Positions 29,305-61,512 of a stretch of DNA of 64,000 nt are shown piece after piece. The stretch lies in the IMG/VR virus record IMGVR_UViG_3300042482_000702, positions 258,478 to 322,477 of that record; one strand, given 5' to 3'. The translations under genes were made by a program, and so were the position numbers. The first letter of the stretch is position 1, and the number at the start of each line of letters is the position of its first letter. The notes under the pieces were generated by a model. That model searched no databases. It saw only the letters and a list, made by a program, of their open reading frames with translations, and was not told where the DNA came from.

Positions 29305-29305
29305 A

Positions 29306-30267: not shown

Positions 30268-30328
30268 ATTTAAAGTAAAATATAATTTACAAATACACCC
30301 ATTTTTGTAAATTATATTTAATGTTAAT

Positions 30329-31397: not shown

Positions 31398-31426
31398 ACA
31401 TCTGTTTTGTGAGTACAAAGATAATA

Positions 31427-31759: not shown

Positions 31760-31820
31760 AATTTTTATATATTTAATTTCGACAAAGATAATACAATTTT
31801 TTAAACTACCAAACTTTATT

Positions 31821-32330: not shown

Positions 32331-32360
32331 GATTTCTAATTTTTAATTAAACATTTTTTT

Positions 32361-32960
32361 TTACTCTAAACTATCAGGATAGTATAAAAGTGTTGGATTT
32401 TTCTTTTGGATGTCTATCTCCGGAAATTTTTCTTGGAATTTTCTAACATCAAATTTTCTGGTAATTAAATGAACACCATTTTTTGTTGGGATGACAGCCT
32501 CAACTTTATCACCAACCGGTTGTAAAACAATTAGAAATTTTGACACTTCAAAAAGAGTATCAAAATCTTTAGTATCAATATCTACAATCCATCTTTTTTC
32601 CTGTGTCTTAATTTGACCCACAACCGAATCAAATAAACCTTTTTGGTTTTGAACCCCATTTTTGATTCTCTCAGCAAGAAGTGCTAACATATCCAAAGAT
32701 ACATCACGATGATTTTGTTTTTGGATGTGGATGTAAGCTCTCGCTTTAAACATCTCACATAATTGGATAATCTCATCATACCTTTTCTCCAAATGCTCAA
32801 TACTATCAATACAGTAAGTTTTAATTGTTCTTACTGATTGGTGATTGTCCCTCTCATCGATGGGTTGGTCTTTTTTACGCTTAAAAACATATAACATATA
32901 AAAATCACCCTTTTCGGAGAAATTTAACAATGGTTTCAGTTGTTCGATGTTGTTTATCAT
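32361..32960 (-). CDS. Hypothetical protein
   Basis: 199 aa; WIVDIDTKD and GVHLIT motifs suggest a metal-dependent enzyme, not assigned. Confidence 0.75.
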   Translation of the reverse strand: MINNIEQLKPLLNFSEKGDFYMLYVFKRKKDQPIDERDNHQSVRTIKTYCIDSIEHLEKRYDEIIQLCEMFKARAYIHIQKQNHRDVSLDMLALLAERIKNGVQNQKGLFDSVVGQIKTQEKRWIVDIDTKDFDTLFEVSKFLIVLQPVGDKVEAVIPTKNGVHLITRKFDVRKFQEKFPEIDIQKKNPTLLYYPDSLE

Positions 32961-32976
32961 TATTTCTATTTTTTTG

Positions 32977-33047
32977 TTCCCCCAGGTGGTATCGAACCAA
33001 CTTCCCGATATTAAAAGTATCGTGCTTCACCTTAAAGCTTTGGGGGA
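32977..33047 (-). tRNA. tRNA-Lys(TTT)
   Basis: CGATA-CTTTTAA-TATCG. Confidence 0.88.
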
Positions 33048-33129
33048 GTTTGAGCTCATTTCACTTTGTTATTTGGCTCAAAACATAACTAATTTGAGCT
33101 TAATAATCAAAGTTTGTGAGCCACATTTG

Positions 33130-33201
33130 TTGTTCCGGTAGGATTTGAACCTACGACCGCTGAAGTATCAGTTCAGAACTCTACCGCTGAGTTACGGAAC
33201 A
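33130..33201 (-). tRNA. tRNA-Ile(GAT)
   Basis: CTGAA-CTGATAC-TTCAG. Confidence 0.9.
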
Positions 33202-33207
33202 ATATTG

Positions 33208-33279
33208 TCGGGATAGCAGGGGTCGAACCTGCCGCCTCTTGGTCCCAAACCAAGCGTCTCACCCCAAGACTATATCCCG
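33208..33279 (-). tRNA. tRNA-Pro(TGG)
   Basis: C1-G72, A73; CTTGG-TTTGGGA-CCAAG. Confidence 0.9.
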
Positions 33280-33286
33280 AATAATA

Positions 33287-33344
33287 AACTACCACCTGAC
33301 TCTTTTCGAACTTTGCAGGCTCGTATCATTCCCTAATGGTAGTT
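33287..33344 (-). ncRNA. Anticodon-stem-loop display RNA 1 (Cys loop)
   Basis: AACTACCA/TGGTAGTT closing helix; AATGATA-CGAGC-CTGCAAA-GTTCG-AAAA. Confidence 0.6.
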
Positions 33345-33350
33345 ATTTTG

Positions 33351-33424
33351 TCTAAATGACTGGACTCGAACCAGCGGTCTCTACATTCCAAGTGTAGCGG
33401 ATTAACCAACTTTCCCACATCTAG
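33351..33424 (-). tRNA. tRNA-Pro(TGG), second copy
   Basis: CTAGATG/CATTTAG, A73; CTACA-CTTGGAA-TGTAG. Confidence 0.88.
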
Positions 33425-33443
33425 ATTTTAATTTTATTTTCTG

Positions 33444-33529
33444 CGGAGAGCAGAATACTTGAAATCCATCCCTTTTACAGAACCACTCGCTTAGCAGGCG
33501 GTGACAATACCCTGATTGTTTTACTCTCC
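33444..33529 (-). tRNA. tRNA-Ser(GCT)
   Basis: G73, long variable arm, loop CTGCTAA; imperfect anticodon and T stems. Confidence 0.78.
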
Positions 33530-33535
33530 ATTTTG

Positions 33536-33607
33536 TGTCCCCAAGAGGATTCGAACCCCTATCTCTGATGCCGTAAATCAAAATTCTATCCGTTGAACTA
33601 TGGTGAC
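33536..33607 (-). tRNA. tRNA-Arg(ACG)
   Basis: TTGAT-TTACGGC-ATCAG. Confidence 0.88.
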
Positions 33608-33611
33608 AATT

Positions 33612-33731
33612 TGAGGTTGAGAACTCCTCTGTGTTGTGTGTTTAAGACTAACTTTTTATACACTAAATAGGACTTACGCAAGTAGGTTGGCCTAATTTTA
33701 ATACTTAATTCCCCTCTCACAGGAACAACAC
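33612..33731 (-). ncRNA. Pseudoknot RNA motif, copy 2 of 3
   Basis: GTGTTGTTCCTGTGAGAGGGGAA - 73-nt variable - AACACAGAGGAGTTCTCAACCTCA. Confidence 0.62.
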
Positions 33732-33736
33732 GGCTG

Positions 33737-33826
33737 TGAGGTTGAGAACTCCTCTGTGTTAGTCTTTACTAGTTAATTGCAATAACCGTGTAGCCACTCT
33801 ATTTTCCCCTCTCACAGGAACAACAC
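33737..33826 (-). ncRNA. Pseudoknot RNA motif, copy 3 of 3
   Basis: Same 23-nt and 24-nt ends as copy 2, 43-nt unrelated middle. Confidence 0.62.
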
Positions 33827-33829
33827 ATT

Positions 33830-34018
33830 TTACTTCCATTGAGTTTTTCGGTTATACTTCCAAGTTTTATGTTCTCTGTATTTGTGAGAGAACTGACCTC
33901 TTCTATAATGAACACCCTCATCCCAATAAGGTGGATATTCAAACTTTAACCAAATTACTCTGTAATCTTTGGAACAAGTTGCCTTGTTCAGTTTCATTCT
34001 GTTTGTGTTTACACTCAT
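33830..34018 (-). CDS. Small basic hypothetical protein
   Basis: 62 aa, aromatic/basic, KTWKYNRKTQWK end. Confidence 0.6.
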   Translation of the reverse strand: MSVNTNRMKLNKATCSKDYRVIWLKFEYPPYWDEGVHYRRGQFSHKYREHKTWKYNRKTQWK

Positions 34019-34068
34019 AATCTTGAGTCTGTTGTTTAGCAGACCTCAAAGATTATCCAATACCTTTT

Positions 34069-34326
34069 TCATAACCGTAATTTATAAATTCTTTTATAAT
34101 CATCCATCGCCGACTTCAGATTTACAATACATTCTCGGTAATTAACATTATCACCAAGATTAAATCTTTCATTTTCTTGTTCCCTCTTGAATAACACTTT
34201 CAATGAATTATCAATGTTAGATAGAATGTCCAAGTAAATCATTTCCTTATCTTTGGATTTTTTTAAATCAAATTTCAAATCAACAATTAGACCTTCTAAT
34301 TCTTCAATTTTTTTATCTTCATCCAT
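34069..34326 (-). CDS. Coiled-coil hypothetical protein
   Basis: 85-aa ORF. Confidence 0.65.
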   Translation of the reverse strand: MDEDKKIEELEGLIVDLKFDLKKSKDKEMIYLDILSNIDNSLKVLFKREQENERFNLGDNVNYRECIVNLKSAMDDYKRIYKLRL

Positions 34327-34340
34327 AACAAATAATTTTG

Positions 34341-34413
34341 GGAGTTAGTTCGGTATCGAACCGAATTCTTTGGTACCACAAACCAACGCTTCACCGTTAA
34401 AGCTTCAAACTCC
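34341..34413 (-). tRNA. tRNA-His(GTG)
   Basis: Encoded G-1:C73; TTGGT-TTGTGGT-ACCAA. Confidence 0.9.
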
Positions 34414-34477
34414 ATATTACCCCACTTCCCCGGCTTAACGGACCGAGTGCCATATAGGAGGTGTGGGGGTAACCTCG

Positions 34478-34549
34478 CTCCTCCGGGTGGGATTGAACCA
34501 CCATGATTTGATTAACAGTCAAACATAATTACCATTATATGACAGAGGA
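34478..34549 (-). tRNA. tRNA-Asn(GTT)
   Basis: TTTGA-CTGTTAA-TCAAA; G73. Confidence 0.9.
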
Positions 34550-34552
34550 AGA

Positions 34553-34608
34553 TATGACCACTATGTTATTTTGCGAACGTATGAAGCTCGTATCATTGTT
34601 AAGTCATA
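34553..34608 (-). ncRNA. Anticodon-stem-loop display RNA 2 (CAT loop)
   Basis: TATGAC/GTCATA closing helix; AATGATA-CGAGC-TTCATAC-GTTCG-CAAAA. Confidence 0.6.
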
Positions 34609-34699
34609 GTAGTCCAAGGCGTTACGCACCCATCTGGTAACTTTACTTCTCTTGAGTCCGGGTAAGCGCTTACCAACTCGGGGGTTGTTTCCTTGTTTG

Positions 34700-34772
34700 T
34701 GGGGACTACCGGTTACGCTCCGGTCTCCTTGATTCTTCAGACCAATGCTTTCACTAGATTAGCTTAATCCCC
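34700..34772 (-). tRNA. tRNA-Phe(GAA)
   Basis: TTGGT-CTGAAGA-ATCAA; T-loop AGCGTAA. Confidence 0.85.
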
Positions 34773-34915
34773 AATTAAAATGATGGTGAGATACCCGTTT
34801 CGTCTCACTCTTGACTGCTTAATAGTAGTTTTACTGTGCACAGGCAGAGGGTTATAATTTCGTTTATTGTAATCAGAATTGTCGACATTCTTTCATACAG
34901 AAATTCATCATTTTG

Positions 34916-34996
34916 TGGGACACTATGGAATCGAACCATACCCTACTACAGAACGGTGTTACAGACCGCTTATCACACCAGTGACTGAAGCATCCC
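34916..34996 (-). tRNA. tRNA-Tyr(GTA)
   Basis: CGGT-CTGTAAC-ACCG; long variable region; A73. Confidence 0.85.
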
Positions 34997-35002
34997 TTTT
35001 TG

Positions 35003-35073
35003 TACCTCGTGATGGTTATGCTCCACCGCCATTTGTATGTAAAACAAATACGCTCCTATTACGCCAACGAGGT
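35003..35073 (-). tRNA. tRNA-Val(TAC)
   Basis: TTTGT-TTTACAT-ACAAA; T-loop AGCATAA. Confidence 0.82.
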
Positions 35074-35166
35074 AAATAAAATTAACAATTGCTATCAGGA
35101 TTTAAACGTCGCTCAGAATACTTACTGACGCCCACCGATTGGGTACGATGACTAGTTAATTTTTTG

Positions 35167-35238
35167 TACCGATGGGTGGGATTGAACCACCGACACCTTC
35201 CGTATGAAAGAAGTGCTCTACCACTGAGCTACATCAGT
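35167..35238 (-). tRNA. tRNA-Met/Ile2 (CAT)
   Basis: Canonical cloverleaf; CTTCT-TTCATAC-GGAAG. Confidence 0.88.
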
Positions 35239-35292
35239 ATTTTGGTGGATATAGGCTCATCACCTATTCGTGGGTTTCCACCGAACCCCTCG

Positions 35293-35364
35293 TTACCCCT
35301 AATGGAATCGAACCACTCCCGCATGGACCAAAACCATGTGTACTAACCGATATACGAAGGGGCA
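35293..35364 (-). tRNA. tRNA-Gln(TTG)
   Basis: U1-A72; CATGG-TTTTGGT-CCATG. Confidence 0.88.
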
Positions 35365-35370
35365 AAATTG

Positions 35371-35452
35371 CGGAAGAGACAGGATTCGAACCTGCAAAGC
35401 TGTTACACCCGATAGTTTTCAAGACTACTTAACGACCACTGTCCACTCTTCC
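35371..35452 (-). tRNA. tRNA-Ser(TGA)
   Basis: GTAGT-CTTGAAA-ACTAT; long variable arm; G73. Confidence 0.9.
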
Positions 35453-38243: not shown

Positions 38244-39275
38244 TTAAAATTCATTATTATCAACATTATTTACATAAGCCTCAGCATCAGGTATTGGTCT
38301 TTCTTCTGGTGCTGGTGCTGGTCTTTCTTCTGGTGCCGGAGCTGGTGTTGTTCCACCACATATTTTACTAACATCAGCATCGGTAAATCCATTTGGAAAA
38401 CCTTTAGCAACTAACGCCGCTTGTGTTTTAATCCAAAATTTACCGTCTTGGATTAACCCTAAACATGCCTGAACTTGTCCAATAACACCTGTTGGTGATG
38501 TTTTACACCCTTTTTTATAAGTACCTCTACCTGTACAATCAATATATCTATTTGTACCAGGGGGTGTTACAGGTGGTGTTACAGGTGGTGTTACAGGTAA
38601 ATCGTCCGGAACTGTGCTCATAGTTGATAAAATCCACCAAGCAATCAATCCCGCGGCCAAAAGACCGACACCCCATTTAGCAGCGGAAGATTTAACTATT
38701 TCTTTAAATGATAACCCTTTCTTTACCATTACTTCAACTTCTTCAGACCCACCTTCTCTAACAACTTTTTCTAACCCTTCTTTACTAGCCTTAGCAAAGT
38801 CGTCGGCACCGGCCTTTATTGTTTTACTAGCACCTCCTCTAGTTCGTTTGGTAATACCATTAACTATTTGTCTAGAGTTGTTTCTAAGTTGATTTGTAAT
38901 ATTGATAACAATACCCCTATCCGCCAATTCTTTACTACCCTGTTTTGCCGCTGCTTCAGCCTCTTCTTGAGCTAATCTAATTAATTCCGCTTTAATACCG
39001 CTTTTTTGGGTGTCGGTTAATGATTGTAAACCCGCTTTTTTCATAACAGATTTTTGAGCTGCGCGTTCTACTGATGAGTAAACTTTTCCTTGTTTTGAAA
39101 TCACCCCGACACCCTTCATGGCGGCTTGAACTTCAGCCCTTAAAATAGATAATATTTCTGTTTCGGCCACGTTTTTAAATAAACTACCTAACGCACTTTC
39201 GTTTAAAGTGAATTTATTTTCAATACCGATAAGTTCCGATATTCTATGTATTTCTGTAATTAAATTTTTTTCCAT
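38244..39275 (-). CDS. Putative virion protein with TM helix and C-terminal peptidoglycan-binding-like domain
   Basis: N-terminus LITEIHRISELIG; TM WGVGLLAAGLIAWWIL; VIGQVQACLGL..DGKFWIKTQAAL resembles PG_binding_1. Confidence 0.7.
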   Translation of the reverse strand: MEKNLITEIHRISELIGIENKFTLNESALGSLFKNVAETEILSILRAEVQAAMKGVGVISKQGKVYSSVERAAQKSVMKKAGLQSLTDTQKSGIKAELIRLAQEEAEAAAKQGSKELADRGIVINITNQLRNNSRQIVNGITKRTRGGASKTIKAGADDFAKASKEGLEKVVREGGSEEVEVMVKKGLSFKEIVKSSAAKWGVGLLAAGLIAWWILSTMSTVPDDLPVTPPVTPPVTPPGTNRYIDCTGRGTYKKGCKTSPTGVIGQVQACLGLIQDGKFWIKTQAALVAKGFPNGFTDADVSKICGGTTPAPAPEERPAPAPEERPIPDAEAYVNNVDNNEF

Positions 39276-41933: not shown

Positions 41934-42311
41934 TTAATTGATTGGTAAATTTGGGGATGTTAAAACATCAATCATTTCTGATAATCTTTCCGATTCTATT
42001 TCACTTTGAAATCCTTTTGTATACCAATTACAATCACCTTTAATACACGATTGTTTTAATTTAAATTGCACGATAATTTTATTACTAGGTTTTAAAACTT
42101 TTAAGACAGCACCATCTTTCTTAAATTCAAAAAAGAAATTTCCCGCTCCTTGTATTTTTTTAACTAATACTTTTCTACCTCCGGTGTTATTGGCATCGGT
42201 GTATCCCCTACTTCTTAATTTTGTTTCCAAATTTGAATTGGATTGTTCATTAATAAGTCGTTTTATAATACTAATTAAATCACTTTCTTTTAATCTAATA
42301 ATTTTTTTCAT
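41934..42311 (-). CDS. Tagged hypothetical protein (MKKIIRLKESDL)
   Basis: N-terminus matches 60122-60544. Confidence 0.75.
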   Translation of the reverse strand: MKKIIRLKESDLISIIKRLINEQSNSNLETKLRSRGYTDANNTGGRKVLVKKIQGAGNFFFEFKKDGAVLKVLKPSNKIIVQFKLKQSCIKGDCNWYTKGFQSEIESERLSEMIDVLTSPNLPIN

Positions 42312-43634: not shown

Positions 43635-44264
43635 ATGAAAAGGTTATTAATAATTAACGAGCAACAAAAAAAATTGATTTTAACTGAATCAATTATCAAT
43701 GAATTTACAAAATCAATAGAAGAAGGGTATGACTATACCTCTAAAGTATTGAAAGAAGTGAATGAAAATTATAAATTAAATTTTGAGTTTCTTATAACCT
43801 GGGGAGCTAGTATTGGAGGTTTTATCTCTCCAATAAGTGAATTTTTGCAAGGTAGATTCCCTGAAATTTCTGATTTAGATTTGAGTTTAATTTTAACGGG
43901 TATTATTGCGGTTAATTATATTGATAATAGAAAAAGTGTAGAAAAAGTACTTAAACTAATTAGAGAGGAGGGATTATCCGATATTTTTAAAGTTGGGTTA
44001 GATAAATCAATTGAGTTGAAAGAGGTTATGTTTAAATTTTTAGAGAGTTTGAATATAACATTATTTAAAATCACAAAAATGATGTCTTATGCTTTTATCA
44101 TACCTATTTTAGTTATGTTATATACAATGGTGATAAATAAACAAATTAATGAGTCTGATGCTAAAGAAATAACTTTAAGAATTTTAGGTAGTGGATTAGT
44201 TAATGTTGGTGGAATTATGATAAAAGATTTAATTAGTAAATTAATTGCTCGTTTTAAAGGTTAA
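43635..44264 (+). CDS. Tagged membrane protein
   Basis: MKRLLIINEQQ N-terminus; hydrophobic helices; TATTTAT at 43622-43628. Confidence 0.72.
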   Translation: MKRLLIINEQQKKLILTESIINEFTKSIEEGYDYTSKVLKEVNENYKLNFEFLITWGASIGGFISPISEFLQGRFPEISDLDLSLILTGIIAVNYIDNRKSVEKVLKLIREEGLSDIFKVGLDKSIELKEVMFKFLESLNITLFKITKMMSYAFIIPILVMLYTMVINKQINESDAKEITLRILGSGLVNVGGIMIKDLISKLIARFKG

Positions 44265-46869: not shown

Positions 46870-47505
46870 ATGAAAAAACACATAATCACCGAACAAGAAA
46901 AAAATAGAATACTTAAATTACATTTAAGTGAAAAAAATATTAACGAGGATTTAACATCTTATTACGGTGGAGATGAATTTAAAAAAATGTTAGATAAAAT
47001 GAGTGAACCGAGTCCAATGTTTGACTACACCTCTGAAACTTCTTTATCTCCAAAAAAGTTTAATGAATTTTATGATAAAATAGAGGGAAAATTATTTGCA
47101 TCATTTGGGGGTTTAGGTAAATATGTTGAATTTATTAGGGATTATCCCGCGTCACCTGAAATGAATTTAATTTTAAAAAAACATCCCGTGATTGATACGT
47201 TTTCATCTTATGATGACTATAAAAATTCGCCATATTATGAAATGTCAGAAATTTTTTTTAAACCTAATAGGTATCATACTGAAAACGATAAACGCAGGTC
47301 TTTTGACCATTTTATAGATAAATTTGGAGACCTTATAATTAAAAAAGGGGGCGACTTTAATAAAGAAAATGTTAAAACATATAGAGATAAAACAGAAAAA
47401 ATGTCACCTGAAGATAAAACCCGAGAATACACAGTAGGTATTAACAAAGTTCATCAAAATTTTGATGATGAAGGAAATGTTATCAGTAGAAAAAACATTA
47501 ATTAA
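46870..47505 (+). CDS. Tagged hypothetical protein
   Basis: MKKHIITEQEKNRILKLH N-terminus; TATTTAT at 46849-46855. Confidence 0.75.
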   Translation: MKKHIITEQEKNRILKLHLSEKNINEDLTSYYGGDEFKKMLDKMSEPSPMFDYTSETSLSPKKFNEFYDKIEGKLFASFGGLGKYVEFIRDYPASPEMNLILKKHPVIDTFSSYDDYKNSPYYEMSEIFFKPNRYHTENDKRRSFDHFIDKFGDLIIKKGGDFNKENVKTYRDKTEKMSPEDKTREYTVGINKVHQNFDDEGNVISRKNIN

Positions 47506-52531: not shown

Positions 52532-54406
52532 TTATTCAGATTTTATCTCTTCAAATTCAACATCAGACACATCAATATCGGATTCTGAACCATCACCTTC
52601 ATTAACACTTGAGTATAAATCTTGAGATATTTGTTGGAACTTTTGAGACAATTCTTCCGACAATACCTTAACATTTTCAATATCTCTACTTGAATGAGCT
52701 TCTTTCAATTTATCCATTGATTCAGTTATTGTTGTTTTTTGTTCTTCAGAAATTTTATCTTCCAAATCCGTCAAAGATTTACCTGTTTGGAAAATCAGGT
52801 TGTCAGCAGAATTTAATGTATCCACATCCTCTTTAAGTTTTTTGTCCGATTCAGCATTTTCTTCAGCCTCCAATTTCATTTTTTCAATTTCCTCTTGAGA
52901 TAATCCTGAAGATGCCTCAATTCTGATTGATTGTGTTTTGTTTGTTGCTTTATCCACAGCGGAAACATTAATAATACCATTCGCATCAATATCAAAAATC
53001 ACTTCAATTTGAGGTGTTCCTCTCATTGCCGGTGGTAACCCATCTAAATGGAATCTACCGATTGTTCTATTGTCTTTTGCCATTGGTCTCTCACCTTGTA
53101 ATACATGGATTTCAACAGATGGTTGGTTATCAACAGCCGTTGAGAACACTTGAGATTTTTTAGTTGGAATTGTGGTGTTAGATTCAATAAGACGAGTTAA
53201 AACTCCCCCCATTGTTTCAATACCTAATGATAGAGGAGTAACATCTAACAATAATACATCTTTCACATCACCAGCCAACACACCACCCTGAATAGCCGCT
53301 CCTAAAGCAACAACCTCATCCGGATTAACACCTTTTGATGGTTCTTTACCGAAGAACTTTTTAACAGCTTCCTGTATTGCAGGGATTCTAGTAGAACCAC
53401 CAACAAGGATAACCTCGTCAATATCAGTAATCTTTAATTTAGCATTTTTCAATGCCGATTTACACGGAGCAATAGTTCGTTTAATCAAATCACTCGCAAG
53501 TTGCTCAAATTTAGCCCTTGTTAATGTCTTCACCAAATGTTTTGGTCCGGTAGCATCAGCACTTAAATAAGGTAAGTTAATTTCTGTTTGAGGAGAAGAA
53601 GATAATTCAACTTTAGCTTTCTCAGCACCTTCTCTTAACCTTTGTAACGCCATTGGGTCTTTTGTAATGTCTAAACCATCATTATCTTTTTTAAATTCAT
53701 CAACTAAAAAGTCAATAATAATTTGGTCAAAGTCATCACCACCTAAATGGGTATCACCATCAGTTGATAGTACTTCAAACACACCACCACCTAATTCAAG
53801 GATGGACACATCATGCGTTCCACCACCACAATCAAACACAACAATTTTACTATCACCTTTTTTATCAATACCATAAGCCAATGCAGAACTTGTAGGTTCA
53901 GATATAATTCTCAAAACATTTAATCCAGCAATTTGACCTGCTTCAATTGTTGCTTGTCTTTGAGAGTCATTAAAATAAGCTGGTACGGTGATAACCGCGT
54001 CAGTGATAGATTCACCAACATAATCTTCAGCAGTTTGTTTCATTTTTTGTAAAATGATTGCTGAAATTTCTTGTGGAGAGTATTCTCTATCGTCAATTTT
54101 AACTCTTGGAGTGTTTCCACTACCTTTAACCACAGAATACGAAACTTTAGATAGTTCATTTACGATACTATCATAGTTAGCTCCCATGAATCGTTTAATT
54201 GATGATATAGTTTTTGTTGGATTGGTAACCGCCTGTCTTTTTGCTGGGTCACCAACTTTTCTTTCTCCATCAGTTAAGAAAGCAACAATTGAAGGTGTTG
54301 TTCTTTTACCTTCGCTATTTGCGATAATTATGGGTTCGCCGCCCTCCATAATGGCACAACACGAGTTTGTTGTGCCTAAATCAATTCCTAGAACTTTTTT
54401 GCTCAT
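52532..54406 (-). CDS. dnaK: Hsp70 chaperone DnaK
   Basis: [22 protein letters not shown]-type [30 protein letters not shown]; full length. Confidence 0.97.
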
Positions 54407-54579: not shown

Positions 54580-54954
54580 ATGAAATTATTTTTAGACGAC
54601 CACAGAGAACCTTACGATGTGTTTAAAGACACAATTGACCCAATTTATGAAAATAATAATGATTGGAAGGTAGTTAAGGATTATTTAGAATTTGTGGATA
54701 CCATTTTAGAACACGGATTACCGGAAGTAATATCGTTTGACCACGATTTATCTCAAAATCATTATTTACCCGAAAATCAAACAAATATCAGTTATGACAC
54801 CATAAAAGATAGGACAGGATTTGACGCCGCATTATGGTTAATAGGGTATTGTAGAATGAACCATACTGGATTACCAAAAATTAAAGTTCATTCCGCCAAT
54901 GTTGAAGGTAAAAGGAATATTGAGAGATTATTTTTCGGAAACAAAGGCTCTTAA
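54580..54954 (+). CDS. Cyclic-phosphate-processing receiver domain protein, second copy
   Basis: LFLDDHR, ISFDHDL, TGFD, VHSANVEG; promoter TATCTTTG at 54568-54575. Confidence 0.78.
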   Translation: MKLFLDDHREPYDVFKDTIDPIYENNNDWKVVKDYLEFVDTILEHGLPEVISFDHDLSQNHYLPENQTNISYDTIKDRTGFDAALWLIGYCRMNHTGLPKIKVHSANVEGKRNIERLFFGNKGS

Positions 54955-55509
54955 TTTAACTTTATCCCAATTTTTAAAGTCCTCGCCATTATCACCAAGT
55001 TTTAATGTGGACATAGCTCTATGCCATCCTTCAACAATCTCATACTTACCATGTTTATCTATATGAACAATTATTGGTTCGTTTTTACCTGTTGGGGTGG
55101 CTAGTTCTCTTTGTATTTCCATCCTTTCTTTATCGTCCTTAACAAAATAAGCATCAACTTCACCAAATTCTCTCTCAATGAAGGAGTTTATATTGTTTTC
55201 AACAAAATCTTCAGGATTAACTGTAATTATCTGTAATTTCCACGGACCTTTTAAATAGTTATAAATCATTTTACCTAAAAAAGGTATTGGGTCTCCGTGA
55301 TATTGTCCCATCACGGTTTTATAACTCTCCTCATCACCACATAAAACATTTGTTACAAATTCTTTTAAGATATATTCCGGAGTATTTGGGAACTCTTTTT
55401 TGAATCTATTATAAAATGATTTACATACTGAAGATGTTGGTTTATAGAGGGGGATTGATTGGATATCCTCCCATAATTTATATTGTTGTTCCGTTATTAT
55501 TATTTTCAT
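54928..55509 (-). CDS. Tagged protein with ParB/Srx-like domain
   Basis: MKIIITEQQY N-terminus; EPIIV..YEIVEGWHR. Confidence 0.7.
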   Translation of the reverse strand: MKIIITEQQYKLWEDIQSIPLYKPTSSVCKSFYNRFKKEFPNTPEYILKEFVTNVLCGDEESYKTVMGQYHGDPIPFLGKMIYNYLKGPWKLQIITVNPEDFVENNINSFIEREFGEVDAYFVKDDKERMEIQRELATPTGKNEPIIVHIDKHGKYEIVEGWHRAMSTLKLGDNGEDFKNWDKVKLRAFVSEK

Positions 55510-55510
55510 A

Positions 55511-55816
55511 TTAAACTTGTTCTACTCTGTAACATTTTTTACCTCTAAACCCAAACTTTTTATTAGCCCATTCTAATAATAAATCACTAACCTCATCATT
55601 ATCAAATCCAAACATATTACGAATAAAATCCCATATATCATGTTTAACACGTAAAGTTTTAGTTCTACTAATATAAGACATCTTAAACATTCCTTTATCC
55701 GCAACAAAAATGTCTTCATATTCAGGGTATCTTAATAATTCTAAATTGGGATAATCATTCTCTAACCATTTAATAGCGATTTGACTTCTTTTGCTCTCTG
55801 TTATTAATATTTTCAT
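55511..55816 (-). CDS. Tagged hypothetical protein
   Basis: MKILITES N-terminus. Confidence 0.7.
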   Translation of the reverse strand: MKILITESKRSQIAIKWLENDYPNLELLRYPEYEDIFVADKGMFKMSYISRTKTLRVKHDIWDFIRNMFGFDNDEVSDLLLEWANKKFGFRGKKCYRVEQV

Positions 55817-56172
55817 CACCACGCTTTACAGCTCCAAAACTTTGCGGAAGTTTTTGGACCAGGATTTTTACAATTATGTCTTGCTCTAAAAGATTTACGA
55901 TGTTTGGGACTTTGAACTTTAATTCTCATATTAGGGTCACCAAAATTAACCTTAACAACATTTCCTTTTGCGTTCTTAACATATACCGAGCGTTTTTTAG
56001 GTCCGTCAGGTGTTAAAAATGGTTTATTAAGGGTCACTTTTCGTCCCTGATATTCAGCTTCAGTTAGTAAATCACCAACAACAAAGTTAGTTTCTTCAAC
56101 GGAGCCATAAAAACTATCGTCTAATTCATTAAACAATTTTTCGTACTGAGATTCTGTTATTATTATTTTCAT
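55816..56172 (-). CDS. Tagged basic protein
   Basis: MKIIITESQY N-terminus; internal LLTE; basic C-domain ending RKSFRARHNC..FWSCKAW. Confidence 0.75.
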   Translation of the reverse strand: MKIIITESQYEKLFNELDDSFYGSVEETNFVVGDLLTEAEYQGRKVTLNKPFLTPDGPKKRSVYVKNAKGNVVKVNFGDPNMRIKVQSPKHRKSFRARHNCKNPGPKTSAKFWSCKAW

Positions 56173-56173
56173 A

Positions 56174-56632
56174 TTACATTCTATTTTTTATATCGTTTAA
56201 CATACTTTCATCAAATTCAACTCCGTGTCTTTCTTGAAAATGACTTAACAATAATCTAATTGGTTCATAATACCCTTTATCTTGTAATAGTATATACGCT
56301 CCCAAATCAGCTTCTAATTCATCTTTATTATCTCTAGGCCCATCGTGTCCTAATAACACATGAGTAATTTCATGAGCCTCAATAAATTTTAAAATATCTG
56401 TAGCATCTGGTTGTCCCACCAATATCTCACCATCAATAATGATTAAATTTTTACCAGGAACCATAAACCCAAACCCATACTCTTCAAAATATTCTTTAAC
56501 CTGTTCATATAATGGGTCGTCTTCAAACACAACAACAACTGTCACACCTTCTAAAAATTCGCTGGTGTATTCCAATTGGGTGTCTTCTTTAATTATTGTT
56601 CTATATTGAGATTCTGTTATTATTAATTTCAT
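56174..56632 (-). CDS. Tagged HExxH metallopeptidase-like protein
   Basis: Probable start MKLIITESQY at 56632; AHEITHVLLGH..ELEAD. Confidence 0.72.
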   Translation of the reverse strand: MKLIITESQYRTIIKEDTQLEYTSEFLEGVTVVVVFEDDPLYEQVKEYFEEYGFGFMVPGKNLIIIDGEILVGQPDATDILKFIEAHEITHVLLGHDGPRDNKDELEADLGAYILLQDKGYYEPIRLLLSHFQERHGVEFDESMLNDIKNRM

Positions 56633-56636
56633 GTTT

Positions 56637-57791
56637 TTACCATTTATAATTATCCTCGCCAAACATAATTACAAAATCCGCCAATACAAGGTTTAATTTT
56701 GGAAATTTTTTATTAAGCATATTAAGAAATAATTTATTACTTAATTGAGCCATACCATTATAATAATTAATATTATTTTGTCTAAGAATATCACCTATTG
56801 ACTTGAATATTATTGTAAGTTGATTGCCTTGAATTACAAATTTTTTATTATACTCATCAATATTTGATTTAAACCATCTACGTCCATTATCTAATTCATC
56901 ATCTAATGTTATGTTATTAACAATATCATTTAAAATATATTTAATACCTTTTATTGTATTTTTTTCATCATCTGTTATCTCTAAACCTAATTTTTCTTTA
57001 TAATAAATTGGTATTAACTTTTCACTTAACCCTTTTTTTAGTAAAAATTTAGTTAAATTAAGAAATAATTTACTTTCACTAACGTCATCATCATTTTTAT
57101 TCATAAATTGACCAGAATCATAGTGAAATTGATAAGGTGATAATGGGTCACCCATATTATAAAAAACATAATAGGATGAACCAGGGGAATCATTAAGATA
57201 TCTCTTAAAACTATCAAATCCTGCCATAGTGCAAATAGATACTATCTGACCTTTATCTCTACCCGAACATTTACCAAGAATCTCTCGATATAAATTCCAA
57301 ACTTCTTTACTATCCTTCACTTCCGGTGGCACTTGAAAAGATTGTAATCCATCAACCATACCCAAATATTTAATACCGACCGATTCTAATTTTTGAATAT
57401 CGTTTGTGCTAATTAAGTTTTTCTTATCGGAAACATCACCTTGTTTGTTATCTTGCTGTTTTATTAAAATATCTTTTGATTTTCTTTCAAACTCAAAAAC
57501 GTCATTTATCGTTTTAATTTGACCTAAATCTTTAATAGGGTAATGTTGTTTAAATTTTTCAAAAACATTAAAGTAATTTTTAAATTTATAAGCATCCTCA
57601 TATTTTATGAAACCGGAACTTAACATTTTCAACAACCATCCAACATAGAATGGTTTTTTTATGTTATTAAGAATTTCGTTAAATTGATTTTCAGGAATTA
57701 ATCCTGAATCAACGTACTTTTCTCTAAACTCTTCTTCGGAATATGCTTCAGTCAGTATCCTATACTGACTTTCGGTTATTATTAATTTCAT
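56637..57791 (-). CDS. Tagged hypothetical protein
   Basis: MKLIITESQY N-terminus; 384 aa. Confidence 0.75.
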   Translation of the reverse strand: MKLIITESQYRILTEAYSEEEFREKYVDSGLIPENQFNEILNNIKKPFYVGWLLKMLSSGFIKYEDAYKFKNYFNVFEKFKQHYPIKDLGQIKTINDVFEFERKSKDILIKQQDNKQGDVSDKKNLISTNDIQKLESVGIKYLGMVDGLQSFQVPPEVKDSKEVWNLYREILGKCSGRDKGQIVSICTMAGFDSFKRYLNDSPGSSYYVFYNMGDPLSPYQFHYDSGQFMNKNDDDVSESKLFLNLTKFLLKKGLSEKLIPIYYKEKLGLEITDDEKNTIKGIKYILNDIVNNITLDDELDNGRRWFKSNIDEYNKKFVIQGNQLTIIFKSIGDILRQNNINYYNGMAQLSNKLFLNMLNKKFPKLNLVLADFVIMFGEDNYKW

Positions 57792-58180
57792 AACTTATTT
57801 ATACCCCCTTTAAAAGTTGATTGAGCGTTTTCATCGTATGTTTTATTAAACCACTCTAATAAATCATTCTCAAACCACATTGAATATTGTTTAGCTCTAT
57901 TATGAATTTTTGTATTAACATATAACCTATTCGGTGCTTCAGAACCTACTTCACCAACACCGGATTTCCAATCAGATGGTGAATCAATTATTAAAGTAAA
58001 AAATATTTCATTTGTTTTTGGGTCATAATATCTACGAGTAACACCTCTTACCGAACTTTTAATTCTATTTATTTTTAAATTTCCAATATTTGGATATCTG
58101 ATTTTTAAAAATGTGTCAAAGTCCGGTTTATCATTTTCAACCAATTTTTGATATTGTGATTCTGTTATAATTAATTTCAT
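57788..58180 (-). CDS. Tagged hypothetical protein
   Basis: MKLIITESQY N-terminus; TATTTAT at 58185-58191. Confidence 0.75.
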   Translation of the reverse strand: MKLIITESQYQKLVENDKPDFDTFLKIRYPNIGNLKINRIKSSVRGVTRRYYDPKTNEIFFTLIIDSPSDWKSGVGEVGSEAPNRLYVNTKIHNRAKQYSMWFENDLLEWFNKTYDENAQSTFKGGINKL

Positions 58181-59308
58181 ATTGATAAATACTTTGAATT
58201 ATTTTTGATTCCAACCAAGTTGGGGATAATTACCGGTTGTTATTATATTACCATTAGTATTTTTACTTTTTAGTCCATAAAAAACTTCGTGATTTATTTC
58301 GTGATAAGTTTTAGTGGTATATGATATTCTAACTAATTTTATATTATTATTTTGACAATACGAGTTTTTTTCTTTGTCACTATTAATTCGTTTTCTAAAT
58401 TCTTCTTCACCACCAAAATATTCGTTTGATTGAAAATGTTGTTTCCCATCATATTCAAATATGATACCGGTTTCAGGTATGTAAAACCCTTCATTTTTAC
58501 CAACCATATAATTATTTTCATTATACGGTAGAAAAATATCAAATTTATAAAACTTACAAGTTAAACTATTTTTACAATCTTTATATGTATGTTGACCTTG
58601 TCGTGGAATATCTTTGAACCCCAAATTTTCTAATGTATCTCTAATTGCTTTTTCACCCCACCATTCTCTTAATTTTCCTAATTTTTTTTGTATTTCATAA
58701 ATTTGGTCTAAAACATTTTGAAATTTTCCAGTTTTATCGGATTTTTTATTATTATGGAACCAAATATAAGTATCACGGGTAAATTCACCACCATTTTTTA
58801 CGTGATTTAAAATTTGCTCAATTTTTTTATTTTCTAATTCTTCCTGTATTTTTGTAATTTGGTCTAAACCATTTTGAAATTTTCCGGTTTTATCGTATAA
58901 TATTTTACTATATAACCAAAGATAATTATTGTCTTTATTATCACGTTTAAATTCACCACCATTTTTTACGTGATTTAAAATTTCCTCAATTTTTTCATTT
59001 TCTAATTCAATCTTAATTTCCTTAATTTGGTTTAAAGCGTTTTGAAATTTTTGTTCTTCGGTTTTATCGGATTTTTTTTTATTATATAACCACTTATAAT
59101 AATCGTCTTTTGCCCTATTACGTATAAATTCACCACCATTTCTTACGTGATTTAAAATTTCCTCAATTTTTGCATCAATTTCTTCAGGAGTTTCTTTTGG
59201 TTTTCCACCCTCATTAATCTTACCAAACACAACATCTCTCGGTTTATTAACCAATGTCCTATACTGACTTTCTGTTATTCTAATTTTCATATTGATAAAT
59301 ACTTTGAA
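58175..59308. repeat. 24-nt direct repeat (promoter + start codon) flanking the endonuclease gene
   Basis: TTTCATATTGATAAATACTTTGAA at 58175-58198 and 59285-59308. Confidence 0.85.
58199..59290 (-). CDS. Tagged PD-(D/E)xK (Vsr/DUF559-like) endonuclease with three ~50-aa repeats
   Basis: MKIRITESQY; KIEEILNHV.NGGEF x3; GEKAI..FDIFL..FEYDGKQH..FGG..DKEKN.YC..NNIKLVRI. Confidence 0.8.
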   Translation of the reverse strand: MKIRITESQYRTLVNKPRDVVFGKINEGGKPKETPEEIDAKIEEILNHVRNGGEFIRNRAKDDYYKWLYNKKKSDKTEEQKFQNALNQIKEIKIELENEKIEEILNHVKNGGEFKRDNKDNNYLWLYSKILYDKTGKFQNGLDQITKIQEELENKKIEQILNHVKNGGEFTRDTYIWFHNNKKSDKTGKFQNVLDQIYEIQKKLGKLREWWGEKAIRDTLENLGFKDIPRQGQHTYKDCKNSLTCKFYKFDIFLPYNENNYMVGKNEGFYIPETGIIFEYDGKQHFQSNEYFGGEEEFRKRINSDKEKNSYCQNNNIKLVRISYTTKTYHEINHEVFYGLKSKNTNGNIITTGNYPQLGWNQK

Positions 59309-59338
59309 ATTATGTATCTTTACACAAAACTATAAATT

Positions 59339-60043
59339 ATGATAAAAAATACAACCCCTTACATCGGAAAAATCAGTTTAAAACTTGAAAAATACCCTGA
59401 ATACTCCGGGAAATCAAAATTAAACAAAATTCACTTGGATTTAGGTTTTACAAAATTGGTTTCAAGAATCACACCCAAAAGAGATTTAGCTGGATGGATA
59501 GTTAATCCGGAATGTGTTCATAAAATTAATAATTACACTGGTGGTGTTATTAAAGAACACTCTTTTGGAGATATAGACGAATATTCCCTACCAAATTCAT
59601 TCTTATCAAAAGAAGGTGATTATATTGGTGATATAGAGCGTGGTTGGTGGTATTACCAAAATAATATGGTGATTTGCGATGAATACCCTAGAGGAGTTGC
59701 CAAAATAATTAATGAAGTCACTTATGTTAATCACCATTTATTTCCTGAAATAGAAGGTTATTACGGATATACTCATAGAGGTGGTCAAACATTTAAACTT
59801 GGTGATAGATTATTTGACGCTTCTTACGAACCAAAAGAAGAAGATTATGAAGAGTGGGAATGGACTGGTTGGGAATATAAGTATCTTGAATTATATGGTA
59901 AATCTGACGCATTAGATAAAAAATGGATGAGAGAATCCGGCATTTCTTATGTAATCCCATTTAAAAAACGAGGTAAAAAAGTAATTGAAACTTTGGAAGA
60001 AGCTTTACAAGCGGCAATCAATATGTCAAATGAATTGTCTTAA
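59339..60043 (+). CDS. Hypothetical protein
   Basis: 234-aa ORF, aromatic-rich. Confidence 0.75.
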   Translation: MIKNTTPYIGKISLKLEKYPEYSGKSKLNKIHLDLGFTKLVSRITPKRDLAGWIVNPECVHKINNYTGGVIKEHSFGDIDEYSLPNSFLSKEGDYIGDIERGWWYYQNNMVICDEYPRGVAKIINEVTYVNHHLFPEIEGYYGYTHRGGQTFKLGDRLFDASYEPKEEDYEEWEWTGWEYKYLELYGKSDALDKKWMRESGISYVIPFKKRGKKVIETLEEALQAAINMSNELS

Positions 60044-60121: not shown

Positions 60122-60544
60122 TTATTGTTGTTTTCGTCTCGCAACCAATTGGGGAAGAATTGGTTGTTCCGGAAAACCACTGCCACGTTTTGAAAATTTA
60201 TCGGAATGAATTTTATTAATTCGTTCCTCTATTCTTGGAACAAACCGACAATATTGATGAGGTTGGTCATCATATAGATAATTTTTACAATAATCTTTGG
60301 CAATGGACAACAATATTTCTGTGTCCGCTAATAATTTACGTAAATCGCTTTTTTCAAAATCATTATAATCTGTCCGAGCTTTATTGAGTTTTTCTCCATG
60401 AGAAGTCCAATCTTCATCAGACATTTTATCCATTTGTTCGGGGCTTAATGTCCCAAATCCATCACTATCAAATGGGGCCTCATTTATTATTTTCTTAACC
60501 AAACTCGTTAAGTCCGATTCAGATAATCTTACAACTTTTTTCAT
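60122..60544 (-). CDS. Tagged hypothetical protein (MKKVVRLSESDL)
   Basis: N-terminus matches 41934-42311; TATTTAT at 60561-60567. Confidence 0.75.
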   Translation of the reverse strand: MKKVVRLSESDLTSLVKKIINEAPFDSDGFGTLSPEQMDKMSDEDWTSHGEKLNKARTDYNDFEKSDLRKLLADTEILLSIAKDYCKNYLYDDQPHQYCRFVPRIEERINKIHSDKFSKRGSGFPEQPILPQLVARRKQQ

Positions 60545-60618: not shown

Positions 60619-61512
60619 ATGAACTTACAAGAACAGACAAATAGGATTAAAGAGATAATGGGTGTTATTTCTGAAAATGATAATTTTATTAAAACTATCA
60701 AAAATTTTGGGATACCCGATACCATCAAATATGTTGGCAGTTATGATTTATTTAAACAAAGTAAATTTTTTGATTCTGTTTTTAAAATGGTTGATGATTT
60801 ATTAAAAGATTTTACTGATTTAATAATTGTGGATAATTATTCTGACGGTAATTATGACGATAAAAATTCATCAAGAGCGGTTGCTTATGGTGAGGGACAT
60901 AATGATTTTAAAATTAAACCCGGGTATGTATATTTTGATTGGTATAAATCCCCCATGAATAAACCAACAGCTACGTTGAGTGTGGATGAAAAATTATCTG
61001 ATGTGTTAAGTTCATTGGATTTACCGGATAATCTTATGAAAGATATTTTGGTTAAATGGGTTAATAAATATTACGATAATATCCCCCCAATCGACAATGT
61101 GAAGTATGGTAAAGTTCTTGGTTATGGGAATGATGAAACTGATGACCATAGTTCTCTGATACCACCACCTCATATCCCTTTTGATGATAATATTCCATCA
61201 AGAAAAATAACTGAAGATGAAATTATTGAACTTTTAAAAGATGCTGCGGAAAAATTTCCTAAAGAAAATTGTGATGATTTAATGGATTGGATGAATATTG
61301 TGTTTACTTATGTTGAAGATTACATTGATGATAATAATATTGATACCGAAATTAAAAATAAATCAATATTTAGTTTGAATTCCGATAATCTTAGAAAAAA
61401 ATATGATTATGTTTTAAGGGATATCTGGGGACCTGATGATGATTATCCATTTTTGGATGACGTTAGAGATTTTGATATGGGTAACTCTTTAAATCATCTA
61501 CGAAATAATTAA
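60619..61512 (+). CDS. Tagged acidic protein
   Basis: MNLQEQTNRIKEIMG N-terminus; TATTTAT at 60608-60614. Confidence 0.75.
   Translation: MNLQEQTNRIKEIMGVISENDNFIKTIKNFGIPDTIKYVGSYDLFKQSKFFDSVFKMVDDLLKDFTDLIIVDNYSDGNYDDKNSSRAVAYGEGHNDFKIKPGYVYFDWYKSPMNKPTATLSVDEKLSDVLSSLDLPDNLMKDILVKWVNKYYDNIPPIDNVKYGKVLGYGNDETDDHSSLIPPPHIPFDDNIPSRKITEDEIIELLKDAAEKFPKENCDDLMDWMNIVFTYVEDYIDDNNIDTEIKNKSIFSLNSDNLRKKYDYVLRDIWGPDDDYPFLDDVRDFDMGNSLNHLRNN

What the first reader, a model, noticed from the sequence alone, without database searches (positions are those of the whole stretch)
54928..59290. Seven consecutive genes with the same MK(I/L)(I/R)ITE(S/Q)(Q/K)Y tag fused to unrelated cargo domains: a candidate capsid-targeting address system
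Seen: ParB-like, HExxH peptidase, PD-(D/E)xK nuclease, a basic domain and unknown domains all start MKxxITESQY, with DNA-level similarity (ATGAAATTAATAATAACAGAATCTCAATA). Related leaders occur across the window: MKKxxRLxESDL (41934, 60122), EEKxRILxxH (194, 42313, 46870), xNExxxRIxxxM (38244, 41311, 60619, 61556), and C-terminal LNENIIRIKQLL / ILESINRIKNLL (7519, 8088). Most are Glu-rich I/L-x-E peptides and many follow a TATTTAT motif. Known: T4 internal proteins share a 10-aa capsid-targeting sequence removed by the prohead protease gp21 after Glu in I/L-x-E. Inference: a portable tag that loads diverse effectors into the head for ejection into the next host.
Basis: partly seen in the sequence, partly recalled or inferred. 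Interest (0 to 1): 0.72.

Follow-up and report, generated by a model that had tools for sequence, protein, structure and literature searches.

The report
Shared leader peptide on phage cargo genes
A lake jumbo phage with a T4-type head puts the same short, probably cleavable leader peptide in front of dozens of unrelated proteins; it most likely sends them into the capsid, as in phage T4 but on a much larger scale, though no experiment has tested this.

Summary
Seven tandem minus-strand genes (54928-59290) start with MK(I/L)(I/L/R)ITE(S/Q)(Q/K)(Y/R) followed by unrelated sequence.

- About 30 genes of this 322-kb phage carry such leaders. Two complete relatives have 24 and 30.
- The exact tag occurs in more than 119 viral contigs, on at least 36 unrelated cargo families. 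It is almost absent from 596 Gb of cellular genomes (3 hits).
- The phage has a T4-type head module: Gp23 capsid protein, gp20 portal and a gp21-like S77 prohead protease.
- The tag's most conserved residues, (I/L)-x-E, match the gp21 cleavage motif. They resemble T4 Alt's removed N-terminus (MELITE) and the ITE in T4 IPI.
- For gene 3, all 120 closest homologues examined keep a junction (L/I)-x-E|AEYQGRKV. The predicted mature end equals the natural start of leaderless versions in phages that are not T4-like.
- Several leader classes are interchangeable in front of the same cargo.
- In an AlphaFold model the tag is disordered and ends at LTE|A.
- Tagged genes tend to share a TATTTAT element with structural genes.

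The capsid-targeting and propeptide reading is the best explanation (about 0.55). Cleavage, packaging and ejection are untested. I rate it a new variant of a known kind.

The parts
54928..55509 (-). Gene 1, 193 aa. Leader MKIIITEQQYKLWE, cargo of unknown function with a weak ParB-like C-terminus.
55511..55816 (-). Gene 2, 101 aa. Leader MKILITESKR, cargo unknown.
55816..56172 (-). Gene 3, 118 aa. A 38-aa leader that ends LLTE|AEYQGRKV, then an 80-aa basic domain (pI 10.8, phrog_7595, called 'HVA1 family' in some records).
56174..56632 (-). Gene 4, 152 aa. Leader MKLIITESQYRTIIKE, then a weakly metalloprotease-like cargo with HEITH.
56637..57791 (-). Gene 5, 384 aa. Leader MKLIITESQYRILTE|A. 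The cargo folds confidently but has no known structural relative.
57788..58180 (-). Gene 6, 130 aa. Leader MKLIITESQYQKLVE|N, cargo unknown.
58199..59290 (-). Gene 7, 363 aa. Leader MKIRITESQY, helical repeats, and a C-terminal homing-endonuclease-like nuclease domain.
58185..58191 (-). TATTTAT, 4 nt upstream of the ATG of gene 6. A promoter-like element shared with structural genes.
59295..59301 (-). TATTTAT, 4 nt upstream of the ATG of gene 7. A weak host-type box (TAGTTTTG) lies at 59325-59332.
60122..60544 (-). Gene with the related leader MKKVVRLSESDLTSLVKKIINE.
41934..42311 (-). Gene with the related leader MKKIIRLKESDLISIIKRLINEQ.
60619..61512 (+). Gene with the class-B leader MNLQEQTNRIKEIMG, preceded by TATTTAT-N4-ATG.
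38244..39275 (-). Gene with the class-B-like leader MEKNLITEIHRISELIG.
46870..47505 (+). Gene with the leader MKKHIITEQEKNRILKLH (class C).
43635..44264 (+). Gene with the leader MKRLLIINEQQKKLILTES, preceded by TATTTAT.

Best explanation
The shared N-terminus is a portable leader, or propeptide, of the capsid-targeting-sequence type known from phage T4.

Proposed course of events (all steps inferred):
1. Tagged proteins are made together with head proteins.
2. The roughly 15-aa leader is a beta-prone MK-III-T stretch followed by a short amphipathic helix ESQYxx(L/I)xE. It docks the protein onto the assembling scaffolding core of the prohead.
3. After the Gp23-type shell closes, the gp21-like S77 protease cuts after Glu in (I/L)-x-E. 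The sites are at residue 7, often again near residue 15, and in gene 3 at LLTE|AEY.
4. The leader is lost, and the cargo stays in the head with the DNA and enters the next cell with it.

Shown here:
- The tag exists and sits strictly at N-termini.
- Selection acts on the peptide, not the DNA.
- The tag is portable across at least 36 cargo families.
- Leader classes are interchangeable.
- T4-type head and protease genes are present.
- The tag carries cleavage-type motifs.
- In the model the leader is disordered.
- Gene 3 has a propeptide-like junction.

Not shown: docking, cleavage, packaging, ejection and any effector role.
For: 1. The genome encodes Peptidase_S77 (E 7.9e-25), a Gp23 capsid protein (1e-73) and Portal_T4 (1e-76) in one module. 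All 6 tag-bearing viral records that are at least 90% complete also have S77.

2. The most conserved tag positions are I/L at position 5 and E at position 7: 20 of 20 class-A leaders have E. This fits gp21 specificity. T4 sequences fetched here show Alt MELITE..., IPI ...TITE|A, IPII and IPIII ...FIAE|A, and gp23 ...FLTE|A. T4 propeptides range from 7 residues (Alt) to 65 (PMC9026906).

3. This phage's own capsid protein has ...FLINE|ATSDG and an N-terminal MGALLES.

4. The gene-3 cargo stands alone, starting MAKYQGR, MATYKGK or MAIYRGR, in a siphophage, a podophage and an archaeal spindle virus. In T4-like phages a leader precedes it and ends L-x-E|AE(Y/F)QG. All 120 closest homologues examined keep this junction while the leader class varies.

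5. Homologues of the gene-5 cargo show the same swapping of leader classes. Each leader ends with two hydrophobic residues, any residue, then Glu.

6. In the AlphaFold2 model of gene 5 the cargo is confident (mean pLDDT 83), but residues 1-16 are below 50. That is exactly up to LTE|A.

7. The tag is virus-specific: more than 119 viral loci against 3 in 596 Gb of cellular genomes.

8. Ser codons switch between TCN and AGY, so selection acts on the peptide.

9. TATTTAT precedes the protease, scaffold-like, portal and baseplate-like genes, and is enriched at tagged genes (odds ratio 3.4-5.5, p 0.005-0.002). Only 2 of 36 genes with host-type promoters are tagged.
Against: - There is no proteomic, cleavage or packaging evidence of any kind.
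- About 8% of all genes are tagged, so many protein species would have to fit in one head. SPN3US heads do hold about 50 proteins.
- Some tagged cargos in relatives have no obvious need for packaging: an ECF-like sigma factor, a lysozyme with LysM, an M23 peptidase and a homing-endonuclease-like nuclease.
- One or two tagged genes sit behind host-type promoters.
- The tag shares only a motif with the T4 sequence, not demonstrable homology.
- All carriers of the exact tag belong to one phage clade, so co-occurrence with S77 is not independent evidence.
- That TATTTAT is a late promoter is inferred only from the genes it precedes.
Confidence: 0.55

Rival explanations
1. The leader is a handle for a chaperone, unfoldase or protease: a client tag for the phage's own DnaK or Clp-family ATPase, or a degron that times turnover. 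It would have nothing to do with the capsid.
For: - A phage DnaK gene (52532-54406) lies next to the array. A Clp-family ATPase lies at genome 256566-258617.
- From general knowledge, a basic residue followed by 3-4 aliphatic residues and Thr resembles the classic DnaK model peptide NRLLLTG and N-terminal ClpX recognition motifs.
- The leader is exposed and disordered in the model.
Against: - The invariant Glu, and the second hydrophobic-hydrophobic-x-Glu site, are not expected for Hsp70 binding, which disfavours acidic residues.
- This reading does not explain the L-x-E|A junction placed exactly at the cargo's natural N-terminus.
- It does not explain the resemblance to verified T4 propeptides.
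Confidence: 0.12
2. The conservation acts on nucleic acid. The shared 5' coding stretch would be a translation-initiation region for leaderless or Shine-Dalgarno-less mRNAs in a Bacteroidota host, and/or a short homology that lets gene cassettes recombine.
For: - TATTTAT lies exactly 4 nt before the ATG of 19 genes, which suggests leaderless transcripts.
- The tag codons are A/T-rich.
- Contigs of related lake populations break synteny at tag-coding sequences: 55489 to 56153 in register, and 56632 to 57761 with 681 other letters behind the tag.
Against: - Synonymous sites vary freely, including TCN and AGY codons for Ser.
- Conservation runs through about 16 residues.
- Five of the seven array genes have no promoter element and abut the preceding gene.
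- Leader classes with quite different sequences replace each other in front of the same cargo.
- Some proteins carry the tag internally, behind another leader, for example MKLSNILKE...KKIVITESQLKKLIE.
- Recombination at tags can be a consequence of the shared sequence rather than its purpose.
Confidence: 0.08
3. The leader is a docking or assembly peptide for some other phage structure or complex, such as a membrane site, the replication machinery or a multi-protein hub. The (I/L)-x-E pattern would simply reflect an amphipathic helix.
For: - The leaders are amphipathic, and several classes share only a hydrophobic periodicity.
- The cargos include a sigma factor and wall hydrolases.
Against: - No candidate partner is known.
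- This does not explain why the mature end predicted by cleavage coincides with the N-terminus of the stand-alone protein.
- It does not explain why leaders accompany this cargo in T4-like phages but not in the phages examined that are not T4-like.
Confidence: 0.12
4. The seven genes are ordinary diverged paralogues whose N-terminal domain happens to be the best-conserved part.
For: They lie in tandem, and some true paralogue families do exist in the clade, for example eight 149-aa copies in relative G042.
Against: - There is no detectable similarity beyond residue 18 among the seven genes. 127 tagged proteins fall into 36 clusters.
- The cargos include different known domains: nuclease, M23, lysozyme, GNAT and sigma factor.
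- One cargo occurs without any leader in other viruses.
Confidence: 0.02

Closest known systems
[quoted passage not shown]
   Same: - A short N-terminal leader shared by otherwise unrelated proteins, ending in (L/I)-x-E.
- A gp21-family protease and a T4-type head are encoded.
- Genes are clustered and polymorphic between related phages.
- One cargo is small and basic.
- Alt's roughly 7-residue MELITE leader and the ITE in IPI are near matches to MK(L/I)IITE.
   Different: - Only the motif is shared; homology to MKTYQEFIAE cannot be shown.
- There are about 30 tagged genes per genome rather than four.
- At least four or five interchangeable leader classes exist.
- Leaders often have two tandem sites, or extra small modules.
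- The host is probably a freshwater Bacteroidota bacterium.
- Nothing has been verified experimentally.
Propeptides of ejection and inner-body proteins in phiKZ-like giant phages (phiKZ, 201phi2-1, SPN3US)
   Same: Many head-internal proteins are processed after Glu by a gp21-related protease. Paralogues share identical N-terminal peptides thought to act like targeting sequences.
   Different: Those propeptides are mostly longer than 100 residues, and the motif is (A/S/G)-x-E. Those phages lack a T4-like scaffold module. Here the leaders are 7-40 residues with I/L at the third position before the cut.
Cargo-loading peptides of encapsulins
   Same: A short portable terminal peptide directs diverse cargo into an HK97-fold shell. 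This is an analogy of function drawn from general knowledge.
   Different: Those peptides are usually C-terminal, are not removed by a protease, bind the shell rather than a scaffold, and the system is cellular and not ejected.

Membership tests
T4-type capsid targeting sequence / internal head proteins | The same short N-terminal leader on otherwise unrelated proteins | tested here: met
   The seven genes share only residues 1 to about 16. 127 tagged proteins form 36 cargo clusters.
T4-type capsid targeting sequence / internal head proteins | The leader contains or ends with the gp21 cleavage motif (L/I)-x-E | tested here: met
   I-T-E at residues 5-7 in all seven genes, and a second site at residues 12-16 in five of them. 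Gene 3 has LLTE|AEY.
T4-type capsid targeting sequence / internal head proteins | A gp21-family prohead protease and a T4-type capsid protein and portal are encoded by the same phage | tested here: met
   Peptidase_S77, Gp23 and Portal_T4 lie in one module at genome 238-246 kb.
T4-type capsid targeting sequence / internal head proteins | A gp22-like scaffolding core to which the leader binds | tested here: inconclusive
   A 484-aa acidic protein lies between the protease and the capsid protein gene, but it has no Pfam or PHROG hit. Binding could not be tested.
T4-type capsid targeting sequence / internal head proteins | The leader is actually removed by the protease during head maturation | not testable with these tools
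   Only indirect support: the predicted mature end of gene 3 equals the natural N-terminus of stand-alone homologues.
T4-type capsid targeting sequence / internal head proteins | The proteins are present in mature heads and ejected with the DNA | not testable with these tools
   The phage is uncultured and known only from lake metagenomes. No proteome is available.
T4-type capsid targeting sequence / internal head proteins | Sequence homology of the leader to the T4 sequence MKTYQEFIAE | tested here: not met
   Only motif-level likeness. The closest matches are T4 Alt MELITE and the ITE in IPI.
T4-type capsid targeting sequence / internal head proteins | Expression while heads are being assembled | tested here: inconclusive
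   TATTTAT is shared with structural genes and enriched at tagged genes. No transcript data give timing.
phiKZ-type ejection-protein propeptides | Long propeptides (about 100 aa or more) cleaved at (A/S/G)-x-E | tested here: not met
   Leaders here are 7-40 aa, with I/L at the third position before the cut.
Ordinary paralogous gene family | Similarity along the whole protein | tested here: not met
   No BLASTP similarity after residue 18.

The most novel reading that the evidence does not exclude
These freshwater jumbo phages run a combinatorial address system. Several interchangeable leader classes load some 30 different proteins per genome (about 8% of the genes) into the head. The cargo would include nucleases, peptidases, wall hydrolases, an acetyltransferase, a DHH phosphoesterase and even a sigma factor, forming an injected proteome that acts before any phage gene is expressed. 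Different leader classes could set copy number, position or order of ejection.
Probability: 0.2. Interest if true: 0.85.

Novelty: new variant of a known kind. Interest (0 to 1): 0.62.

Why it matters
If the reading is right, the leader is a sequence-only marker that picks out the packaged, co-injected proteins of a large clade of uncultured lake phages. That would yield hundreds of candidate first-strike proteins of unknown function, in at least 36 families.

It would also show that T4's targeting principle reaches far beyond the T-even phages and can expand about tenfold.

The leader would be a ready-made short tag for loading foreign proteins into the heads of phages that infect Bacteroidota.

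The claim is directly testable: by mass spectrometry for N-termini that begin after the tag's Glu, and by protease co-expression.

Tried and rejected
- Complex prediction of the S77 protease with residues 1-40 of gene 5 gave no verdict (score 0.00). This is evidence neither for nor against.
- tblastn of genes 1, 4 and 5 against cultured phages found nothing.
- The Atlas feature search for genes 5 and 1 gave only unnamed clusters.
- Foldseek of the gene-5 model against the PDB gave no match at E <= 0.001.
- A full-text search for the motif strings, and for a description of such leaders in jumbo or Bacteroidota phages, found nothing.
- The one RNA run that holds related sequence is kept only as contigs, so transcript 5' ends and timing could not be read.
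- A weak Pfam match of the gene-4 leader to DUF5760 (E 0.07) was not pursued.
- Simple paralogy was rejected.
- A host-cell signal such as secretion or a general translation start was rejected, because the tag is essentially absent from cellular genomes.


Full report
**What the window is**

The window is the last 64 kb of a single 322,477-bp virus record. The record has about 30% G+C and 21 tRNA genes in the window. Closely matching sequence is held by many lake-water metagenomes.

The genome has a T4-type head module at 238-246 kb:
- a Gp23-family major capsid protein (Pfam E 1e-73);
- a T4-like portal (1e-76);
- a gp21-like prohead protease, Peptidase_S77 (7.9e-25).

The nearest cultured capsid proteins are only about 41-42% identical. 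They belong to Microcystis phage Mel-JY01 and the Flavobacterium immuto phages.

About 36 genes are preceded by Bacteroidota-type promoters (TTTG, about 19 nt, then TAnnTTTG). One of the few cellular hits to the tag is a contig binned with a Flavobacterium genome. The host is therefore probably a freshwater Bacteroidota bacterium. This is an inference.

**Checking the observation**

Seven head-to-tail genes on the minus strand, 54928-59290, all start MK(I/L)(I/L/R)ITE(S/Q)(Q/K)(Y/R). The strict pattern occurs six times in all six frames of the genome, each time at one of these starts.

The shared DNA covers about 30 nt and differs at synonymous sites. Ser is encoded by both TCN and AGY codons. 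Conservation is therefore at the level of the peptide.

After the first 18 residues are removed, the seven proteins have no detectable similarity to one another.

Cargo annotation is thin:
- Gene 7 is homing-endonuclease-like (PHROG 4.7e-18).
- Gene 4 is weakly metalloprotease-like (HEITH).
- Gene 1 is weakly ParB-like.
- Gene 3 carries an 80-aa basic domain.
- Genes 2, 5 and 6 are unknown.

**The phenomenon is much larger than the array**

In this genome about 30 genes begin with variants of the leader, such as MKIIITENK..., MKFILTESK... and MK.I(R/K)L(T/S)ESDL... The core motif lies in residues 1-10 of 28 of 316 proteins, against 2-9 of 316 in later windows.

- MNLQExxxRIxxMMG;
- xITEEEKxxIxxLH;
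- MRDLIKKILREE.

A degenerate DNA pattern for MKIIITE(S/T/R)QY found more than 119 loci in IMG/VR. Almost all are at true ORF starts, on at least 36 unrelated cargo clusters.

The same pattern found only 3 loci in 596 Gb of bacterial and archaeal genomes. All three are short contigs of metagenome-assembled genomes.

CheckV completeness of the viral contigs scales with their length, so they are fragments of one clade of roughly 260-320-kb phages. All six records that are at least 90% complete encode S77. Two complete relatives have 24 and 30 tagged genes.

Tagged cargos in relatives include the following:
- a DHH-like phosphoesterase, sometimes fused to a SET domain;
- a GNAT-like domain;
- ECF-like sigma factors;
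- a lysozyme with LysM;
- an M23 peptidase with a peptidoglycan-binding domain.

**Evidence on what the leader does**

1. *Motif.* The best-conserved tag positions are I/L at 5 and Glu at 7, with Glu in 20 of 20 class-A leaders. Five of the seven genes have a second (I/L)-x-E at residues 12-16.

   T4 sequences fetched here read as follows: IPII and IPIII MKTYQEFIAE|A; IPI ...TITE|A; Alt MELITELFDE; gp23 ...FLTE|AEIGG. Cleavage positions are taken from the literature. T4 propeptides range from 7 residues (Alt) to 65 (gp23), and the first 10 residues of IPIII suffice for packaging (PMC9026906; PMC3012670).

   This phage's own capsid protein has ...FLINE|ATSDG, aligned with the T4 site.

2. *A propeptide-type junction.* The gene-3 domain exists as a stand-alone protein of about 80 aa in Pelagibacter siphophage Kolga, Roseobacter podophage CRP-901 and a Nitrosopumilaceae spindle-shaped virus. 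These start MAKYQGR, MATYKGK and MAIYRGR.

   In T4-like phages the domain has a leader that ends L-x-E|AE(Y/F)QG: in this phage, in Kyanoviridae phage C48C1 (leader MKKFKQYIDE, like T4's) and in HTVC008M.

   All 120 closest database homologues examined keep the junction (L/I)-x-E|AEYQGRKV. Cleavage there would yield exactly the N-terminus of the stand-alone form.

3. *Interchangeable leaders.* In those 120 proteins, and in 61 homologues of gene 5, the same cargo is preceded by MKIIITESQY-type...LTESDL...VKRVL.E-type...NE.(L/I)SRIK.(M/I)MG-type or ...IIREALNNLIEE-type leaders. Each has hydrophobic-hydrophobic-x-Glu.

Some proteins carry two leaders in tandem, or small extra modules separated by further hydrophobic-x-Glu sites.

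4. *Structure.* An AlphaFold2 model of gene 5 built with 34 homologues is confident for the cargo (mean pLDDT 83, pTM 0.76). Residues 1-16 are below pLDDT 50, which ends at LTE|A.

5. *Expression context.* TATTTAT lies exactly 4 nt before the ATG of 19 genes, including genes 6 and 7 of the array and baseplate-like genes. With longer spacing it precedes the protease, scaffold-like and portal genes.

   The element lies within 30 nt of 12 of 30 tagged genes against 60 of 362 others (odds ratio 3.4, p 0.005). In the N4-6 register the figures are 7 of 30 against 19 of 362 (p 0.002). Only 2 of the 36 genes with host-type promoters are tagged.

   That TATTTAT is a late promoter is inferred only from the genes it precedes.

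6. *Population variation.* Contigs from related lake populations break synteny at tag-coding sequences. One case keeps the first 30 nt of gene 5 and follows them with 681 different letters. This recalls the polymorphic T-even ip loci. The joints involve repeats and low-identity alignments, so they are only suggestive.

**Interpretation**

The best explanation is a T4-type capsid-targeting leader or propeptide served by the S77 protease. It has expanded to dozens of cargos and several leader classes.

What is shown is the sequence logic. Docking to the core, cleavage, packaging and ejection are inferred. I put this explanation at about 0.55.

**Caveats**

- There are no proteomic data.
- All carriers of the exact tag are one clade.
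- A large share of genes is tagged.
- Some cargos, notably a sigma factor and a homing-endonuclease-like nuclease, have no obvious need for packaging. Packaged transcription factors and enzymes do have precedents, such as T4 Alt.

**Rivals**

- A client tag for the phage's own DnaK or Clp ATPase, or a degron. The DnaK gene is adjacent and the Clp ATPase was found.
- An mRNA- or DNA-level element.
- Docking to some other structure.
- Simple paralogy, which is rejected.

**Novelty**

The concept is established for T4, where diverse internal proteins share only the targeting sequence. Related propeptides are known in phiKZ-like phages.

I found no description of these leaders or of this clade's system.

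The scale, the multiple interchangeable leader classes and the distant, uncultured, probably Bacteroidota-infecting lineage make it a new variant of a known kind.

Noticed in passing
Genome-wide; in the window, 58185-58191 and 59295-59301: TATTTAT sits exactly 4 nt upstream of the ATG of 19 genes. At that spacing transcripts would start at or next to the start codon (leaderless mRNAs). Several structural genes have TATTTATAAATAAAA, which contains the T4 late-promoter word TATAAATA.
   Followed up: partly
Genome-wide; in the window, upstream of 54580 (+ strand): About 36 genes are preceded by Bacteroidota-type promoters (TTTG, about 19 nt, then TA(T/C)CTTTG). This points to a Bacteroidota host and marks likely early genes.
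   Followed up: partly
window 52532-54406 (-) and genome C1:256566-258617 (+): The phage encodes a full-length DnaK (Hsp70) and a Clp-family AAA+ ATPase (phrog_4871, E 3e-241). This may be a phage-borne chaperone or disaggregase pair.
   Followed up: no
window 59339-60043 (+) and 54580-54954 (+): The array is flanked by a Tad6-family gene (type I Thoeris inhibitor, Pfam 1.5e-16) and a cREC_REC receiver-domain gene (1.6e-18). The neighbourhood therefore looks like an anti-defence region.
   Followed up: no
window 58199-59290, around 58669-59016: Gene 7 contains helical repeats (IEEILNHVKNGGEF...). Contigs from other lake samples lack about 346 nt there, which is a repeat-number polymorphism.
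   Followed up: partly
window 55816-56172 and loci L134-L143: The 80-aa basic domain of gene 3 belongs to a very large family (more than 7,900 database proteins). It occurs in pelagiphages, roseophages, Flavobacterium and Methylophilales phages, and even Nitrosopumilaceae spindle-shaped viruses. Its function is unknown.
   Followed up: partly
Proteins P0019-P0064 (homologues of gene 3): Many homologues insert small basic modules (CWKGY...PNCVK and AQQAAIAINMKKKGIKPK) between leader and cargo. Each module is bounded by hydrophobic-x-Glu, like a small polyprotein.
   Followed up: no
window 13045-17949 (+): A 1634-aa protein combines BspA-type leucine-rich repeats, DUF285 and three Fib_succ_major domains. 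It may be an adhesin or fibre-like protein.
   Followed up: no
window 24353-35452: A dense block of 20 tRNA genes lies on the minus strand, with one more at 5568-5659.
   Followed up: no
Relative G006 (loci L162-L175), 31291-31773 and 233494-233940: This 269-kb relative has two Peptidase_S77 genes and a second set of leaders (...LLNE and ...LLKE types) near the first. Either it has two head-maturation modules or it is a chimeric assembly.
   Followed up: no
Genome C1:56739-58148 (-): This phage's DHH-like protein has a shortened leader, MKKLIIE|SGIRE. Relatives have MKIIITESQYKMLINE|SGIRD. It looks like a deletion between the two Glu sites that still keeps hydrophobic-x-Glu.
   Followed up: partly
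window 7519-8088 and 8088-8714 (-): Two adjacent genes end with ...LNENIIRIKQLLK and ...ILESINRIKNLL. The RIK-type motif, otherwise seen at N-termini, therefore also occurs at C-termini. T4 Alt is processed at both ends.
   Followed up: no
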